NCBI RefSeq assembly: GCF_000315625.1
Contig: NW_005434637.1
Coordinates: 505,985 to 569,984, forward strand
Source: Guillardia theta CCMP2712
Lineage: Eukaryota > Protista > Cryptophyta
DNA length: 64,000 bases
Direction: 5' to 3'
Notes under the pieces: generated by a model
Seen by the model: only the letters and a program-made list of their open reading frames with translations
Told to the model about the DNA's origin: nothing
The model's database searches: none
Translations under genes and position numbers: made by a program
Part shown: positions 26,049 to 56,319 of the stretch, one piece after another
Layout of the letters: the number at the start of each line of letters is the position of its first letter
Position numbering within the stretch: position 1 is the first letter of the stretch

Positions 26049-29000
26049 TCAGTCTCTCAAAGTGCTAGGGCAAGAAGTAGCAAACCTGAAGGACGGGAGA
26101 AGAAGGAGTTTTGCGCCAGCTGAGAAGCATGTCAGTGGCAAGCAGCCTGGAGAGCAGAAGGGAGGAGGGAAATCCCGATCACCTGCTGCCGTACATGGAA
26201 CTTGTTCTCGAGGTGGACCTGGTTGGAGACGAGGCGGTTCTGTATGCTCATCTCCTTCTGGAAGATCGTCTCCCTGCCATGGCCGTCACTCCTGTAGCCC
26301 CTTCCTCGCAGCAGCGGACCTCTCCATCCTCAGCGGCCTCTCCTGCGGCTGCCGCACCACCAGCTTCTGCCTGGGAAGCTTGTAGAGGACCTCGAGTGGT
26401 GGATCGGAGCTGGGAAGGGGACGGGCCCGCCGCTGCCGCTCGATGAAGGCTCTGGAGCCCGCCTGCATCCTTCTCTGCACGTTGCTGCCGTCGGAAGGGA
26501 ATGGCAGAGGCTCCTGCTAGGCGTCAGCTCGGCAAAGACCTTCCAGGAGGCAGCACCTGCTCCGGCGAGACGCTTGAATATGACGAAGGAATGTGAGGAA
26601 GGCGGACCCCTTCCTTTGCCACTGGTGGGCGGGGTCTCCGCTGCTCTACGCGCTTGTTCGGGGAGATGCTGGGGAGGATGAGGTCGGAGGAGACGTCCCC
26701 CTCCGGCGCGCGGCTCCTCCTCTTCTGGTGCTCGATGGCTGCAAGAGGAGGTCAGGGCGANNNNNNNNNNNNNNNNNNNNNNNNNNNNNNNNNNNNNNNN
26801 NNNNNNNNNNNNNNNNNNNNNNNNNNNNNNNNNNNNNNNNNNNNNNNNNNNNNNNNNNNNATGAGAATCTGCTGCTTAACTGCATGAGCTTCTCCACTCT
26901 CTCATTGGCTTGCTGGATTGTGTCGACATCGACGTTCTGAGGAGAATGTGATGAGCGATGGAGAGGAAGCGGGAGAAGGGAGCAGGGGGGAATGAGCATG
27001 GGGGGGTGAAGGGGGGAGGGAGTGGGAAGGAGGAGGGAGGAGGAGAATCACCTGAGTTATGTCGAGTGAGTCCAAAAGGAGGCGTTGGTTGCTGTCTATC
27101 CGCTCCTCCACCTTCAATCCCATGGGCGTCACTGGAGCAGGCGACAAAGACTCTGCTCACCGACGCAAGCTTCTCCTTCAAGCCTCGCAGCAGAGCATCA
27201 TCGCCCGCCTCCACTCGAGATGGTGAGTGGTCGGCTCTAAACATTTTCTTGCTTCCGCTTGAGAAGGATTCTGGGTGAATGTGAGGAAGACAGGAGGAGG
27301 AGGAGGAGGAGGTGGTGGTGGTGGTGGAGGAGGAGGAGGAGGAGGTTCATGCTTCACCGTTGCTCTCCCCTCCCGAACGAGGCGAATCAAGTTCCAGTCG
27401 CTGAGGCTTTGCGCCATCAGCAGGAGGAGAATAGCGGAAGAGGTGGGGTCTCGGGCTACCTGAGGGACAGAGACCGGTCATGCTAGCCCTCCTCCCCTTG
27501 GTCCTCTACCTAAGGGCACAGGACCCTTCAGCTGTGAGAGGGGTATGTCTTCCTCCTCGTCGCCAGGGTTTGCTTCTGAAGAGAACCCGTCCTCGCTCGG
27601 CTGGCTACCTGATACTTCCTCCCTCGCTGGGATCTCCTCATACACGTCCGCAGAGGCGAATCGAGCGTGCCTTCCCTCCTCTAGGTGCAAACTTGGTTCC
27701 TTCAGTCTCCTTGGGGGAGTAGTGGGAGAGAGTTTCACTGCTCTGCGCTGTGGAGCAGGGTGAGCGTCCTGCTTGGCAAAGCCGACACCCCGAGCTCCCC
27801 TTTCTTGTCCCTCATCGTCCCCAGCAAACTTTGCAACTTTCTTCTTCCGAGGGTGAGCTACCCCGACTCCTGGAGAGAAAATCAGCAAAACTGCTTCCCA
27901 CGTGTTCCTCACCCGAACCTCCTTCAGGAGAGGAAGAGAGCTGAGCGCTTGGAACTTGAGCTCTCCTCCCGTCATGCTCCTCGGCTGGAGACTTCTCTTC
28001 TTCCGACCCTCTTCTCATCCCTGACACTTCTCGCCCATAAGACTTAGAATCTTTTGCTCGACGACGAGCATGCATCCCCCTTGCTCGAGCCTGGATCTTC
28101 GTCGCTGCCTTGTGCTCGTGACACTCCCCGTCCTCTCCTCCCTCTACCTCCTCTCCTCCTTCCTCCACGTCTGCTCCTCCGTCTCCCTCCTGCTCGTCTG
28201 CCACCGGCTCGGCGTCTCCTGCCGGGTCTTGGCCTGCTCCTTGCTCCCCCGCAGCAGACTGCCGCCTCCTGCTGACTTCCCGCCGAGCATGCATCCCCCT
28301 TGCTCGAGCCTGGATCTTCGTCGCTGCCTTGTGCTCGTGACCCTCCCCGTCCTCTCCTCCCTCTGTTCCCTCTCCTCCTTCCTCCACGCCTGCTCCTCCG
28401 TCTACATCTCCCTCCTGCTCGTCTGCCACCGGCTCGGCATCTCCTGCCGGGTCTTGGCCTGCTCCTTGCTCCCCCGCAGCAGACTGCCGCCTCCTGCTGA
28501 CTTCCCGCCGAGCATGCATCCCCCTCGCTCGAGCCTGGATCTTCGTCGCTGCCTTGTGCTCGTGACCCTCCCCGTCCTCTCCTCCCTCTGTTCCCTCTCC
28601 TCCTTCCTCCACGCCTGCTCCTCCGTCTCCCTCCTGCTCGTCTGCCACCGGCTCGGCGTCTCCTGCCGGGTCTTGGCCTGCTCCTTGCTCCCCCGCAGCA
28701 GACTGCCGCCTCCTGCTGACTTCCCGCCGAGCATGCATCCCCCTTGCTCGAGCCTGGATCTTCGTCGCTGCCTTGTGCTCGTGACCCTCCCCGTCCTCTC
28801 CTCCCTCTGTTCCCTCTCCTCCTTCCTCCACGCCTGCTCCTCCGTCTACATCTCCCTCCTGCTCGTCTGCCACCGGCTCGGCGTCTCCTGCCGGGTCTTG
28901 GCCTGCTCCTTGCTCCCCCGCAGCAGACTGCCGCCTCCTGCTGACTTCCCGCCGAGCATGCATCCCCCTTGCTCGAGCCTGGATCTTCGTCGCAGCTTGT

Positions 29001-53524: not shown

Positions 53525-54749
53525 TCAAAGCTCGATGTCCTCGACATGACGGCAAAGTTTCAACTGGGTTCCAGCCCATTAGGATGTAGGAACAGGGAGA
53601 CATGCAACCAACCTTGGACTTGCGGAGCTTATGCACTGCCCACCTGATGATACCGATCAGAACGAGGGAACTCGGTTTTCGTCAATCTACGTGTAGATTC
53701 CGTTGTTCATTCCCTCAGGGGGGAAGTGCATGTGCCAGATGCTCTTGAACGGAGTGACGGGGGTTATGCCCTGCTCGATGTGAGCCGACAGAGCTGTCTT
53801 GCTGACTGCATGTGTCTCACCTTCGACTGGATAGCAGGTTGCGCTGAGTCGCCAACTTCGCCATGAACAAAGGCACACTCGTCCCCTTTCGGACATTTTC
53901 CATCCCTTGCCCAATGTCTGCACTTCTAATCAGTACAGGAAGATGATTCAGATGTTAGACAACCTGCAGGTCACGTTCGTGTTGTCCTTCCTTCCCCCGT
54001 GATGTGCATGGTATACGTAAGGTTTGGGCTGACTCACGAGTTACATGTACAATTACTCGAGATGTGACTCACTGGTATCATGTAAAAAGGATGCTGCCCT
54101 TCAATGATGGCGGAATAATAACTCTTTCGATGCACTGATACACAAAGTTACAGAAAACAAGGACAAGAGTTGCTCGCATCTTTTGCGACTTTACCATATT
54201 GAGGCATGAGCAATATCCATGGCTTTTTGCACTCAGATGCGAACACCAGGATCTTTTCTATGTGGTTGCGGCTGTAAGGTGGACTTGTGAGAAGTACATC
54301 GTAAGGGGGGAACTGTTCGGGTTTGAGAGAATAGAAATCCTCGTTGTTGTTATGTACGTTGTGAAAGCCAAGCTTCCTGAGATGGTCTTTGACCTTCCCT
54401 GCGCAATAGTATGGGTCCCAAATGCAGAGGTCTTTTTTCGGTTTGCCAACCCGTTGGGCAAGCTTGATGAGGAAAGGTGCGATGTCACAATACGCCTAAG
54501 TAGCACAAAGAGTGAGAATCGTCGCCGTCAAAGGCTACATGACACCTGGAAGCACGTTTCACAGTCATCTGCGGGGTCATGTTCGAAGGGGTGCAAGTTG
54601 CCCTCGAGCCCTTGAGCTTGAGGGTTCGGTGAGGGTTCAGCTGGTCTCGCTGCCTGCTTCTTGTGTTTCTTCCCTGGTGTCGCTGTTCCCTCTTGCTCGC
54701 CCTCTGCCTCCTTCGACTCGCTCCCTTTGCTTGGCTTCCGCTTCCCCAT
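53525..54749 (-). CDS. Nuclear amino-(N6-adenine/N4-cytosine)-methyltransferase-like protein with inserted CCCH zinc finger, multi-exon
   Basis: Basic NLS-like N-terminus. LCIWDPYYCAGKV (motif I-like), NEDFY, YDVLLTSPPYS (motif IV), KPWILLMPQY, CRHWARDGKCPKGDECAFVH (C-x8-C-x5-C-x3-H) and terminal strand TPFKSIWHMHF. Confidence 0.75.
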
Positions 54750-54844: not shown

Positions 54845-56319
54845 ATGCGAGCGAGTTGCATGCGTACCGCATGCGTTCTGCTATGGCTGATCGACCTGGG
54901 CATATCACACCAGAAGATGGCGGACGTCGGAGCTATCTCTCTATCCCAGCAGATCCTTCAGCTGAGGGAGGGTTGTGGCGGGATCGAGCAAGGACAGAGC
55001 TTGAGGATAAGAGGAGGAGGTTCAGCTACGGGAAAGAAGAGGGCGGCAGCAGGATGTGATGCCGAGCGGAGTAAGAGAAGGAGATTCGGCGGGGCCATTG
55101 ATGGCAACTGCGATTCATATCTTGGATCACCGGATGATGCGACTTTTTCGCAACCCATCTTGAGCGAGAGTTCAGCGACGGAGTTGCGATGCTCGCCACG
55201 CAAAAAGTTACGTAGGAGAGGCACGTGGTCGGAAGCTGCAGATCGTGTAGAACACTCTTCTGTTGGGAGGTCTGACTACAGAGATGACAACGTGCGGGAA
55301 AATACATGCACGGCGCTAGAGAGTTCGTTGCCCGATGGACTTGCCGGTGTTGAATTCATCAAGTCTGGCAAAGTGAAGATCGTCCGAGTTGTCCTACCTG
55401 ATGGGAATCAGTATACTGTGCATGTTCCCGAGATCCTTGTGAACAAACGCAAGAATGTTGCTCTCCATGCGTCTAGTGCGAGCTGTGGGACCGTGTGCCA
55501 TGGCGATGAAAGCGAGCTTATGGGGTCTGGTTTCACCATTCAATCTAAGGTGATGATATCAACCGAAAACATTGTTTGCTTCATATCGCTGACTTTCCTT
55601 GTAACTTGCCTATCTTCCCTTTCTAAACGTGAAGCCCTTCCTGCTCGATGACAGAGGTAGTTGTTTTCCTACCAGTTGTCGTTTGTAACCAGTCTCTACC
55701 AAGACTCGACAGCTGTAGGCAGGGCGAAGAACCGTGCCGTCGGGAGCAATGGAGTGCTGCTGACTGAAAGAGCTCATGTGGATCAAAGGATACCTCCTGT
55801 AAAGCGGCTTTGTCGAATGGTTGCTCCCCTTAGCATGACACTGACCTGTAGACTGACTGTCTACAGGCCAAATTTCCCGGGGAGATTCTGAAACCAAGAG
55901 AAGAAAATTTAGTGCAGGAAAGCAAGCTAGAATGGAAGGTGAGAGCCCATGTTAATGCAACAATATTCACTGATGAGTCTTCAGCCGCGAAAATGCTCTA
56001 CGTGTCAGACAAAGGCAACACCAAGGTGGATATTCTAAAGTTTTGACTGTCATGCCCATGCTTGAGAGACATCCCTGGGATTTCAATAATGAGCTCAAGT
56101 TGTTGTATATTAAAGATCAGATATCTTCCTTCAACTTGTCGCGCCCACTGGAATGCATTCAACAGTGCACAGCTCTGCCACAGACTACACTCAAGGGTCG
56201 CGGAGGTCTCGGGGGTACCACGGGCTCCCAGGGACTTGAAACATGGAGCTACTGCTCGATTGTCCACCTGCCAGAACAAGTTTCAAGAAATTCACTCACA
56301 GGACAGAGGTGTCACCTGA
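54845..56319 (+). CDS. Hypothetical protein with signal-like leader, LRIRGG motif and NLS-like basic clusters, multi-exon
   Basis: ORF 54845-55651 and downstream GT-AG-flanked exons, including a CSTC motif. The 3' end is uncertain. Confidence 0.5.

What the first reader, a model, noticed from the sequence alone, without database searches (positions are those of the whole stretch)
53525..54749. SPPY-type amino-methyltransferase with a CCCH zinc finger embedded in the catalytic domain
Seen: the spliced product (mostly absent from the ORF track) has DPYYCAG, then TSPPYS, then a perfect C-x8-C-x5-C-x3-H finger at about 53863-53922. The finger lies before the last predicted MTase strand (TPFKSIWH), and the N-terminus is NLS-like. 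Established: [DNS]PP[YF] is the catalytic motif of exocyclic-amine nucleic-acid methyltransferases, SPPY is typical of N4-cytosine enzymes, and CCCH fingers usually bind single-stranded RNA. Inference: this is an uncharacterised eukaryotic RNA (or DNA) m6A/m4C writer that uses an inserted CCCH finger as its target-recognition element.
Basis: partly seen in the sequence, partly recalled or inferred. Interest (0 to 1): 0.75.

Follow-up and report, generated by a model that had tools for sequence, protein, structure and literature searches.

The report
Algal methyltransferase with built-in zinc finger
This is a real, spliced gene of the alga Guillardia theta for a small nucleic-acid-type methyltransferase that has a serine instead of the usual asparagine in its catalytic motif and an RNA-binding-type zinc finger in a loop of the catalytic domain. 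It is a conserved, untested variant of an enzyme family so far known only from computer predictions.

Summary
Observation confirmed. The finding's span (53525-54749, minus strand) is the coding region of Guillardia theta GUITHDRAFT_109156 (XP_005832092.1, 292 aa, named only "C3H1-type domain-containing protein"). That public protein maps exactly onto the window as 8 exons with 7 GT-AG introns of 44-60 nt.

It carries DPYYCAG (motif I), SPPY (motif IV) and a C-x8-C-x5-C-x3-H finger that passes Pfam's thresholds.

The AlphaFold model is a Rossmann-fold methyltransferase. Its nearest solved folds are all adenine-N6 DNA and rRNA enzymes (M.TaqI, HsdM, CamA, METTL5, KsgA/Dim1), at Z 10-11.6.

It belongs to a large family of microbial eukaryotes with no Pfam model: 2048 representatives, mostly NPPY, and at least 4 paralogs in this genome. 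The family fits the "Group-2 clade 3" that Iyer, Zhang and Aravind (2016) predicted to methylate RNA and to be often fused to CCCH.

What is particular here is a conserved subclade. An insert carrying the finger, about 35-38 residues longer than the family norm, sits between "YxY" and "PFxSxW", and Asn is replaced by Ser. Several other near-invariant residues also change, and the replacements are mostly kept within the subclade.

Activity, substrate (RNA or DNA) and base (A-N6 or C-N4) remain inference. It is a new variant of a known but uncharacterised kind, of moderate interest.

The parts
53525..54749 (-). Whole coding region of GUITHDRAFT_109156 (292 aa): 8 exons and 7 GT-AG introns of 44-60 nt
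   Evidence: Exact mapping of the public protein P0026 onto the window.
54546..54749 (-). Exon 1 (residues 1-68). It holds the Lys/Arg-rich NLS-like N-terminus (about 54749-54645) and the motif X-like block DDCETC (54569-54552). The family consensus for that block is DHCETP.
   Evidence: The model has low pLDDT for residues 1-50, and the helix 67-83 follows the block.
54195..54495 (-). Exon 2 (residues 69-168 plus 1 nt). It holds motif I DPYYCAG (54417-54397), the N-x-x-E-D-F-Y block, and motif IV SPPY (54285-54274) after strand 4.
   Evidence: Strand 135-138 precedes SPPY in the model.
54073..54134 (-). Exon 3 (residues 169-189). It holds the VHRK-x-YY signature of the CCCH-insert clade and the strand FYMI.
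53964..54028 (-). Exon 4 (residues 190-210 plus 2 nt). It holds the strand YVY, the start of the insert (GGRKDNTNVT) and the first Cys of the finger (53968-53966).
53821..53917 (-). Exon 5 (residues 211-243). It holds the rest of the CCCH finger (to His229 at 53865-53863) and a variable linker.
   Evidence: Pfam zf_CCCH_4 at 1.6e-8 and zf-CCCH at 1.1e-7. pLDDT is 79-91 over residues 201-230 when orthologs are in the alignment.
53691..53770 (-). Exon 6 (residues 244-270). It holds the family block TPFKSIWH (53755-53732; family consensus TSPFxSFWY), which is strand 253-258.
53525..53643 (-). Exons 7 (53643-53613) and 8 (53563-53525, TGA included), with intron 7 between them. Together they encode the C-terminal helix and short strand.

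Best explanation
The gene encodes a small nuclear or nucleolar SAM-dependent amino-methyltransferase. Its catalytic domain is of the TaqI/EcoKI (gamma-order) type and has no separate target-recognition domain.

It belongs to a large family of microbial eukaryotes that has no Pfam model. Within that family it is part of a conserved subclade with three distinguishing features:
- A CCCH finger with a flexible linker was inserted into the loop between the strand "YxY" and the conserved block "PFxSxW".
- The catalytic Asn of NPPY became Ser.
- Several other nearly invariant residues changed, and the replacements are mostly kept within the subclade.

Most likely mechanism:
1. The conserved motif I, N-x-x-E-D-F-Y and motif IV residues bind SAM.
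2. The CCCH finger, held beside the catalytic domain, grips single-stranded RNA and presents a base to the SPPY pocket.
3. The exocyclic amine of that base is methylated.

Shown here: gene structure, fold class, motif conservation, the insertion, and its conservation in orthologs. Inferred: SAM binding, RNA as substrate, and the finger's role in substrate capture. Adenine-N6 and cytosine-N4 are both open. The Ser argues for N4-cytosine or a relaxed specificity.
For: **Gene and splicing**
- The public protein maps exactly with canonical introns.
- Orthologs carry the same junction sequences and the finger.

**Fold**
- AlphaFold2 pLDDT is 81-85, and the core is above 90.
- Most of the 50 best rows of the unbiased structure search, and 49 of 50 in the re-aligned list, are adenine-N6 nucleic-acid methyltransferases. 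The best is lmo1582 (Z 11.6). METTL5 scores 11.0, and M.TaqI, MmeI, DrdV, HsdM, CamA and M.BseCI score 10.2-10.8. KsgA, Dim1 and Erm score about 10.
- M.TaqI aligns only through its catalytic domain (residues 21-245), so no separate recognition domain exists here.

**Family**
- 2048 representatives at E<=1e-3. In the top 150, motif IV is NPPY 136, NPPF 21 and SPPY 6.
- The positions D95, P96, G101, N117, D121, F122, Y123, D134, T138, P140, P141, S143 and H146 are invariant or nearly so in the family, and the window protein keeps all of them.

**Insert**
- The distance from motif IV to PFxSxW has a median of 79 residues in 143 proteins, against 111-117 in the finger-bearing proteins.
- The paralogs in this genome lack the insert.
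- Finger-bearing proteins cluster on a tree built without the insert, and a single clade is not rejected (AU p 0.505).

**Functional shift rather than decay**
- Ser139, Asp62, Trp94, Gln167 and the VHRK signature are mostly kept across orthologs of 54-71% identity.

**RNA rather than DNA**
- CCCH occurs independently at the N-terminus of other family branches, and one member carries a zf-met finger.
- The literature predicts RNA methylation for what is very probably this clade (PMC4738411).

**Ser is chemically competent**
- SPPY is the catalytic motif of the proven N4-cytosine enzyme N4CMT, and changing it to APPA abolishes activity (PMC8885841, PMC10406627).
Against: - No experiment exists for any member of the family.
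- A shared fold shows no function, and the Z values (10-11.6) are middling.
- The window protein departs from the family consensus at H62, P66, Y94, N139, D145, N167, R192 and T248. This could equally mean loss of catalysis.
- CCCH fingers also occur in DNA- and protein-binding contexts.
- I had no model coordinates, so the distance from the finger to the pocket was not measured.
- Inclusion of the finger exon in G. theta mRNA was not checked against RNA-seq.
Confidence: 0.55

Rival explanations
1. It is the RNA-binding, catalytically weak or dead subunit of a hetero-oligomer with one of the canonical NPPY paralogs of the same genome, as METTL14 is to METTL3. The finger brings the RNA, and the partner does the chemistry.
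For: - G. theta has at least four family members: three canonical NPPY proteins plus this one.
- Iyer et al. noted that the clade often occurs as paralog pairs and suggested a dimer.
- The window protein alone has changed several near-invariant, probably active-site residues: H62D, N139S, N167Q and R192P.
Against: - All predicted SAM-binding positions and the P-P-Y of motif IV are intact.
- Ser at this position is the active residue of real N4-cytosine enzymes.
- The replaced residues are themselves mostly conserved within the clade.
- No interaction evidence exists.
Confidence: 0.2
2. It is a DNA methyltransferase (6mA or 4mC) of the host nucleus. The finger would act as a single-stranded-DNA or chromatin adaptor.
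For: - The structural matches that cover most of the protein (residues 56-292) are DNA enzymes: M.TaqI, M.BseCI, CamA, PacII, HsdM and MmeI.
- SPPY is best known from DNA N4-cytosine enzymes.
- The N-terminus is NLS-like.
Against: - It has no target-recognition domain and no chromatin-reader domain.
- The fusions seen in the family are of RNA-binding type (CCCH, zf-met).
- rRNA enzymes score as well as the DNA enzymes.
Confidence: 0.15
3. It methylates a protein (HemK/PrmC-like glutamine, or a lysine) rather than a nucleic acid.
For: A canonical family member gives weak, far sub-threshold NCBIfam matches around motif IV to PrmC and HemK (18.9 bits against a 199 cut-off).
Against: - No HemK/PrmC chain appears among the 50 best structural matches in either list.
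- The N-terminal helix with the ET(P) block and the (D)P-x-x-C-x-G motif I are of the DNA/RNA gamma type.
- The family has recurrent CCCH fusions.
Confidence: 0.04

Closest known systems
Iyer, Zhang and Aravind 2016 (PMC4738411): Group-2 (M.EcoKI/M.TaqI-like) N6A-methylases, third eukaryotic clade, typified by Chlamydomonas CHLREDRAFT_205675
   Same: - TaqI/EcoKI-like core with an N-terminal helix bearing a conserved residue and coil-like segments around strand 3.
- Broad distribution in microbial eukaryotes.
- Several paralogs per genome.
- Recurrent CCCH fusions.
- Predicted RNA methylation.
   Different: - The paper speaks of fusions. Here the finger is an insertion inside the catalytic domain.
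- Motif IV is SPPY, not NPPY.
- I found no KH fusion in the 135 members scanned.
- The prototype could not be fetched, so identity of the clade is very probable but not proven.
M.TaqI and other gamma-class adenine-N6 DNA methyltransferases (HsdM, Eco57I family, CamA, M.BseCI)
   Same: - Order of motifs: X, I, then IV.
- (D/E)P...G motif I and (N/S)PPY after strand 4.
- Structural alignment over residues 56-292, at Z 10.2-10.8.
   Different: - No C-terminal target-recognition domain.
- No significant sequence match: Pfam Eco57I and N6_Mtase are only sub-threshold.
- Eukaryotic and intron-rich.
- Ser replaces Asn.
METTL3 (MT-A70) with its tandem CCCH fingers
   Same: A nucleic-acid amino-methyltransferase that depends on CCCH fingers to hold single-stranded RNA. 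It is a possible model for a paralog pair.
   Different: - METTL3 is of the beta-order MT-A70 family with DPPW.
- Its fingers lie N-terminal to the domain, not inside it.
- There is no MT-A70 Pfam match here.
ZCCHC4 and METTL5 (rRNA m6A writers)
   Same: Small Rossmann amino-methyltransferases acting on rRNA. ZCCHC4 combines the domain with zinc fingers. Fold matches are Z 9.2 (ZCCHC4) and Z 11.0 (METTL5).
   Different: - The motifs differ. From memory, ZCCHC4 has DPPF and METTL5 has NPPF.
- ZCCHC4's fingers are separate GRF, C2H2 and CCHC domains.
- There is no sequence-level relationship.
N4CMT of bdelloid rotifers (PMC8885841, PMC10406627)
   Same: A eukaryotic amino-methyltransferase with a catalytic SPPY motif.
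   Different: - N4CMT is beta-order (motif IV before motif I).
- It was recently acquired from bacteria and is fused to a chromodomain.
- It acts on double-stranded DNA and is unrelated in sequence.

Membership tests
Class I (Rossmann-fold) SAM-dependent methyltransferases | Seven-stranded alpha/beta fold with SAM-binding motif I after strand 1 | tested here: met
   AlphaFold2 models have pLDDT 81 and 85, with the core above 90. 60 solved chains score Z>=8, and nearly all of the rows listed are methyltransferases. The DPYYCAG loop follows strand 1 and precedes helix 102-109.
Exocyclic-amine (amino) methyltransferases | (D/N/S)PP(Y/F/W) directly after strand 4 | tested here: met
   SPPY is at residues 139-142, after strand 135-138. 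In the family alignment this column is N in 122 of 125 sequences and S in 3.
Gamma-order amino methyltransferases (M.TaqI, EcoKI HsdM, Eco57I) | Linear order X - I - IV, with no recognition domain between I and IV | tested here: met
   The DDCET block and helix 67-83 come first, then motif I at 95-101, then motif IV at 139-142.
Gamma-order amino methyltransferases (M.TaqI, EcoKI HsdM, Eco57I) | C-terminal target-recognition domain or a specificity subunit | tested here: not met
   M.TaqI aligns only through its residues 21-245, and the protein ends at residue 292. The Pfam models Eco57I, N6_Mtase and EcoRI_methylase match only below threshold.
Iyer et al. 2016 Group 2 (M.EcoKI/M.TaqI-like) | Helices around strand 3 degenerated to coil, plus an N-terminal helix with a conserved residue | tested here: met
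   Model residues 117-134 contain only two 3-residue turns and no assigned strand 3. The invariant D61/E64 and near-invariant H62/T65 precede helix 67-83.
Iyer et al. 2016 Group 2, third clade (CHLREDRAFT_205675-like) | Broad in microbial eukaryotes, with two or more paralogs per genome | tested here: met
   Members were found in Guillardia, Hanusia, Laminaria, Ectocarpus, Amorphochlora, Pterosperma, Pedinophyceae and Picozoa. There are four loci in G. theta.
Iyer et al. 2016 Group 2, third clade (CHLREDRAFT_205675-like) | Frequent fusion to CCCH and KH domains | tested here: inconclusive
   CCCH was found in 6 of 125 members, either N-terminal or as the insert. No KH domain was found among those 125 members or the 10 longest proteins. 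Only the best 150 of 2048 hits could be seen.
Iyer et al. 2016 Group 2, third clade (CHLREDRAFT_205675-like) | Sequence relationship to the named prototype and to bacterial cognates on conjugative elements | not testable with these tools
   The prototype cannot be fetched by accession, and the paper's supplement is not held. There were no tblastn matches in plasmids or phages. The only "bacterial" locus is a 3.2 kb contig of a metagenome bin.
N4-cytosine methyltransferases | Ser in motif IV (SPPY) | tested here: met
   SPPY is at 54285-54274. It is conserved in all close orthologs.
N4-cytosine methyltransferases | Demonstrated transfer to cytosine N4 | not testable with these tools
   This needs an enzyme assay. 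The nearest relatives by sequence are all NPPY or NPPF proteins.
zf-CCCH (C-x8-C-x5-C-x3-H) | Spacing of the ligands and a Pfam score above the gathering cut-off | tested here: met
   PF18345 scores 34.8 bits against a cut-off of 29, and PF00642 scores 32.1 against 20.5. pLDDT is 79-91 with a short helix at 211-216.
MT-A70 (METTL3/METTL14/METTL4) and PCIF1 | Match to the family's Pfam model | tested here: not met
   There is no such match at E<=1 for the whole protein, or at E<=10 for the single exons.
HemK/PrmC protein glutamine methyltransferases | Score above the NCBIfam cut-off | tested here: not met
   The window protein has no match. A canonical member reaches 18.9 bits against a cut-off of 199.

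The most novel reading that the evidence does not exclude
A TaqI-type eukaryotic methyltransferase lineage has switched from adenine-N6 to cytosine-N4 chemistry (Asn to Ser, with further changes at residues 62, 66, 167 and 192). At about the same time it acquired an internal CCCH reading head. That would make it a nuclear-encoded writer of N4-methylcytosine in cytosolic or nuclear RNA of cryptophyte and green algae. I know of no writer described for such a mark.
Probability: 0.15. Interest if true: 0.8.

Novelty: new variant of a known kind. Interest (0 to 1): 0.5.

Why it matters
No member of this large family of protist and algal methyltransferases has been tested. The family has at least 2048 sequence clusters and no Pfam model. 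Several protist lineages carry adenine or cytosine amino-methyl marks whose writers are unknown.

The SPPY/CCCH subclade is a convenient entry point. It is small (292 aa). It carries its own nucleic-acid-binding module, so it may work without partners. The single Asn-to-Ser difference from its paralogs offers a natural experiment on what sets A-N6 against C-N4 specificity in a gamma-type active site.

If it is instead an inactive RNA-binding partner, it would be a second, independent example of the METTL3/METTL14 arrangement.

Tried and rejected
**My first exon model.** My hand-made model missed two 3' exons and chose another in-frame splice at intron 4. The public protein and the orthologs corrected it.

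**Sequence searches that found no solved relative**
- Exon 2 against solved structures.
- The paralog core.
- The family profile. Its only hits were eL24 on the basic tail, which I take as compositional.

**Family libraries.** Pfam and NCBIfam give no family for the catalytic domain. They give only sub-threshold matches around motif IV: Eco57I, N6_Mtase, EcoRI_methylase, RsmD and PrmC.

**Bacterial, plasmid or phage cognates.** I found none:
- tblastn against plasmids and phages was blank.
- Of two genome scans, the first was blank. The second scan gave one 3.2 kb contig of a Parcubacteria bin, which I take for eukaryotic contamination.

**KH fusions.** None were seen.

**Long "fusion" proteins.** Those with Peptidase_M43 or Glyco_hydro_20 look like merged gene models.

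**Other dead ends**
- The ESM Atlas added only the name "C3H1-type domain-containing protein".
- The AU test on the 143-row tree did not finish in two runs, so I ran it on 45 rows.
I therefore could not check whether the ortholog contigs are intron-less cDNA.

**Joined sequence left out.** Exons were searched one by one by reference. The full-length work used the public protein P0026 that a search returned.
Full report
**What is there**

The finding's span is the coding region of a minus-strand gene. Six-frame reading shows coding pieces joined by very short introns.

A profile search of 1.84 billion representatives returned a 292-residue public protein, P0026. It is XP_005832092.1, GUITHDRAFT_109156 of Guillardia theta CCMP2712. 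UniProt names it only "C3H1-type domain-containing protein".

A script mapped P0026 onto the window without a mismatch. The gene has 8 exons:

| Exon | Coordinates |
|---|---|
| 1 | 54749-54546 |
| 2 | 54495-54195 |
| 3 | 54134-54073 |
| 4 | 54028-53964 |
| 5 | 53917-53821 |
| 6 | 53770-53691 |
| 7 | 53643-53613 |
| 8 | 53563-53525 (TGA included) |

All 7 introns are GT-AG and 44-60 nt long. The genome (87.1 Mb, 669 contigs) is G. theta: one paralog locus is 100% identical to GUITHDRAFT_46531. It is not human.

Exons were searched one by one by reference. The full-length steps used the database protein that a search had returned.

- DPYYCAG lies at 54417-54397 and SPPY at 54285-54274.
- The finger CRHWARDGKCPKGDECAFVH is residues 210-229, and TPFKSIWH lies at 53755-53732.
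- The finger pattern occurs once in all six frames of the window, against 0.03 expected in shuffles. It passes Pfam's gathering scores.
- [DNS]PP[YF] alone is at chance level (8 against 7), so it proves nothing by itself.
- One nuance: in the mapped model the first Cys is encoded at the end of exon 4.
- Orthologs read N-x-x-V-x-CRHW, which favours the mapped model.

**The family**

Exon 2 alone finds three further loci in the same genome. Two are canonical NPPY proteins, GUITHDRAFT_46531 and GUITHDRAFT_90353. A weaker fourth locus on contig 79 also encodes NPPY and the family's PW-LL-PNWVYTKDYY block.

A three-sequence profile finds 2048 representatives at E<=1e-3 and 516 at E<=1e-30. Named members come from cryptophytes, brown algae, chlorarachniophytes, prasinophytes, pedinophytes and Picozoa.

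Neither Pfam nor NCBIfam has a model for the domain. They give only sub-threshold matches around motif IV to Eco57I, N6_Mtase, EcoRI_methylase, RsmD and PrmC.

The conserved blocks of the family, in order, are:
- D-H-C-E-T-P-x-x-A-Y
- I-Y-D-P-Y-Y-C-x-G
- N-x-x-E-D-F-Y
- D-V-L-V-T-N-P-P-Y-S-x-D-H
- K-P-W-x-L-L-x-P-N-x-V-x-x-K-x-Y-Y
- P-x-x-R-Y-x-Y
- T-S-P-F-x-S-F-W-Y
- a basic tail

**Fold**

With 125 family members as the alignment, AlphaFold2 gives pLDDT 81 (core above 90, finger loop 47-64). With orthologs of the finger clade added, it gives pLDDT 85 and 79-91 over residues 201-230. So the finger is modelled as a folded unit, followed by a less certain linker.

An unbiased alignment to 48,161 solved chains gave these matches:

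| Match | Z |
|---|---|
| lmo1582 (2f8l) | 11.6 (rmsd 3.3, 160 residues aligned) |
| METTL5 | 11.0 |
| DrdV, MmeI, M.TaqI, HsdM, CamA, M.BseCI | 10.2-10.8 |
| Dim1, KsgA, Erm | about 10 |
| METTL16 | 9.4 |
| RlmJ, ZCCHC4 | 9.2 |

A re-alignment of Foldseek's best 1000 chains gives the same picture. Foldseek's own top hits were RlmJ, M.BseCI and M.TaqI.

The DNA enzymes align over residues 56-292. M.TaqI aligns only through its catalytic domain (21-245), so this protein has no separate recognition domain.

The order X, I, IV, the coil-like stretch 117-134 in place of the helices around strand 3, and the N-terminal helix behind a conserved block match the definition of "Group 2 (M.EcoKI/M.TaqI-like)" in Iyer, Zhang and Aravind 2016 (PMC4738411).

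Their third clade of that group is described as broad in microbial eukaryotes, often present as paralogs, often fused to CCCH and KH, and probably acting on RNA. That description fits this family in every respect I could test except KH, which I did not find. I could not obtain the prototype (CHLREDRAFT_205675) to prove identity.

**What is special about the window's gene**

- *Position of the finger.* The finger is not a terminal fusion. In 143 proteins the distance from motif IV to P-F-x-S-x-W has a median of 79 residues. In the finger-bearing proteins it is 111-117. The alignment shows the finger plus a variable linker inserted after a conserved G-R of the loop between "YxY" and "PFxSxW". 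The paralogs in the same genome lack it.
- *Conservation of the insert.* Orthologs of 54-71% identity keep the insert and its flanks (G-G-R-x-x-N-x-x-V-x-C-R-H-W...H-G). These are Hanusia phi and several environmental sequences. More distant proteins also keep it: P0074, Pterosperma P0053, and P0154/P0175.
- *Origin.* On a tree built from the core without the insert, these proteins fall in one 96%-supported group of 21 rows. Holding them as one clade is not rejected (AU p 0.505). A single origin is therefore the simplest reading. Four rows lack a recognisable finger in the database: P0077, P0194 and P0162 break off at or read out of frame through the insert, and P0186 has a garbled stretch just before it.
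- *Motif IV.* Ser replaces the Asn that 122 of 125 family members have. The window protein also departs from more than 70% consensus at H62D, P66C, Y94W, D145N, N167Q, R192P and T248V. The replacements at 62, 94, 139 and 167 are kept in all full-length close orthologs, position 66 is C or S, and 145 and 192 vary. Pterosperma P0053 (NPPY) and P0154 (NPPF) carry the finger but not the Ser, so the insertion seems older than the Asn-to-Ser change.
- *SAM-binding positions.* All positions expected to bind SAM are intact: D95, G101, N117, D121 and F122. I assign these by analogy with gamma-class enzymes from my own knowledge. It is not a test.

**How it most likely works**

Shown: it is a conserved, spliced gene for a TaqI-type catalytic domain with an intact cofactor site, a Ser-Pro-Pro-Tyr catalytic loop and a folded CCCH finger inserted in a loop of the domain.

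Inferred:
- The finger binds single-stranded RNA and feeds a base into the pocket. The family has no recognition domain and repeatedly recruits CCCH fingers (N-terminal in two other branches) and once a zf-met finger.
- From my recollection of M.TaqI, the Phe of motif VIII stacks on the flipped base. If P-F-x-S-x-W is that motif, the finger sits just before it, next to the active site. This is a lead, not a result.
- Ser at this position is catalytically competent and typical of N4-cytosine enzymes. In the rotifer enzyme N4CMT, changing SPPY to APPA abolishes activity (PMC8885841, PMC10406627). Cytosine-N4 is therefore a live possibility, but all near relatives are N-type.

My estimates:

| Reading | Probability |
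|---|---|
| Active RNA amino-methyltransferase | about 0.55 |
| RNA-binding partner of an NPPY paralog (METTL14-like) | about 0.2 |
| DNA enzyme | about 0.15 |
| Protein methyltransferase | under 0.05 |

**Novelty and verdict**

The gene is annotated but unnamed, and no paper mentions it. The family has very probably been described in silico, together with CCCH fusions and an RNA prediction.

New here are the internal position of the finger, the conserved SPPY subclade with its set of changes at otherwise near-invariant residues, and the finding that G. theta has one such member beside three canonical ones. I rate it a new variant of a known, uncharacterised kind, with moderate interest.

**Limits**
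- There is no RNA-seq evidence and there are no model coordinates.
- Only the best 150 of the 2048 hits were visible.
- The prototype of the published clade could not be compared.

Noticed in passing
window 53918-53974 (minus strand, intron 4): TGCAG is repeated at both ends of intron 4. Two in-frame GT-AG choices therefore exist: donor after 53964 with acceptor before 53917, or donor after 53974 with acceptor before 53925. Both give a complete CCCH finger (..NVTCRHW.. or ..TNKCRHW..). Orthologs favour the first.
   Followed up: partly
L004 (G000 contig 79, 389474-392572), minus strand: This is a fourth, intron-split family member of G. theta with LLTNPPYSGDH and PWFLLMPNWVYTKDYY blocks. The first search scored only one 33-residue exon of it.
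   Followed up: partly
P0186 (Hanusia phi transcriptome) and P0162 (environmental): Both read the equivalent of exon 4 in another frame (..YIMHIT..). In Hanusia the reading comes back into frame inside the finger. This suggests mis-spliced or alternative transcripts, or gene calls on unspliced DNA, in close relatives.
   Followed up: no
P0050 (Pedinophyceae sp. YPF-701, 815 aa): This gene model joins an SDE2 C-terminal domain, the family's methyltransferase core and a complete Fpg/Nei DNA glycosylase (Fapy_DNA_glyco, H2TH, Fpg-like_C). It is either a merged gene model or a DNA-repair-linked member of the family.
   Followed up: no
L003 628-1980 (GUITHDRAFT_90353 locus): Upstream of this paralog's core, the open frame encodes about 200 residues of Lys/Glu/Asp/Ser-rich low-complexity sequence. 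This is typical of nucleolar proteins. The annotated protein (235 aa) starts inside that stretch.
   Followed up: no
L005 (JACMMR010000009.1, 3.2 kb contig of a Candidatus Parcubacteria bin): This is the only "bacterial" locus with the family's DHCETP and IYDPY blocks (51% identity over 43 residues at the contig end). It is probably a eukaryotic contig binned by mistake.
   Followed up: no
window 54845-55651 (+): A divergently oriented open frame of 268 codons starts about 95 nt upstream of the methyltransferase's ATG. The two genes therefore share a very short intergenic region.
   Followed up: no
window 26761-26860: A run of 100 N, which is an assembly gap.
   Followed up: no
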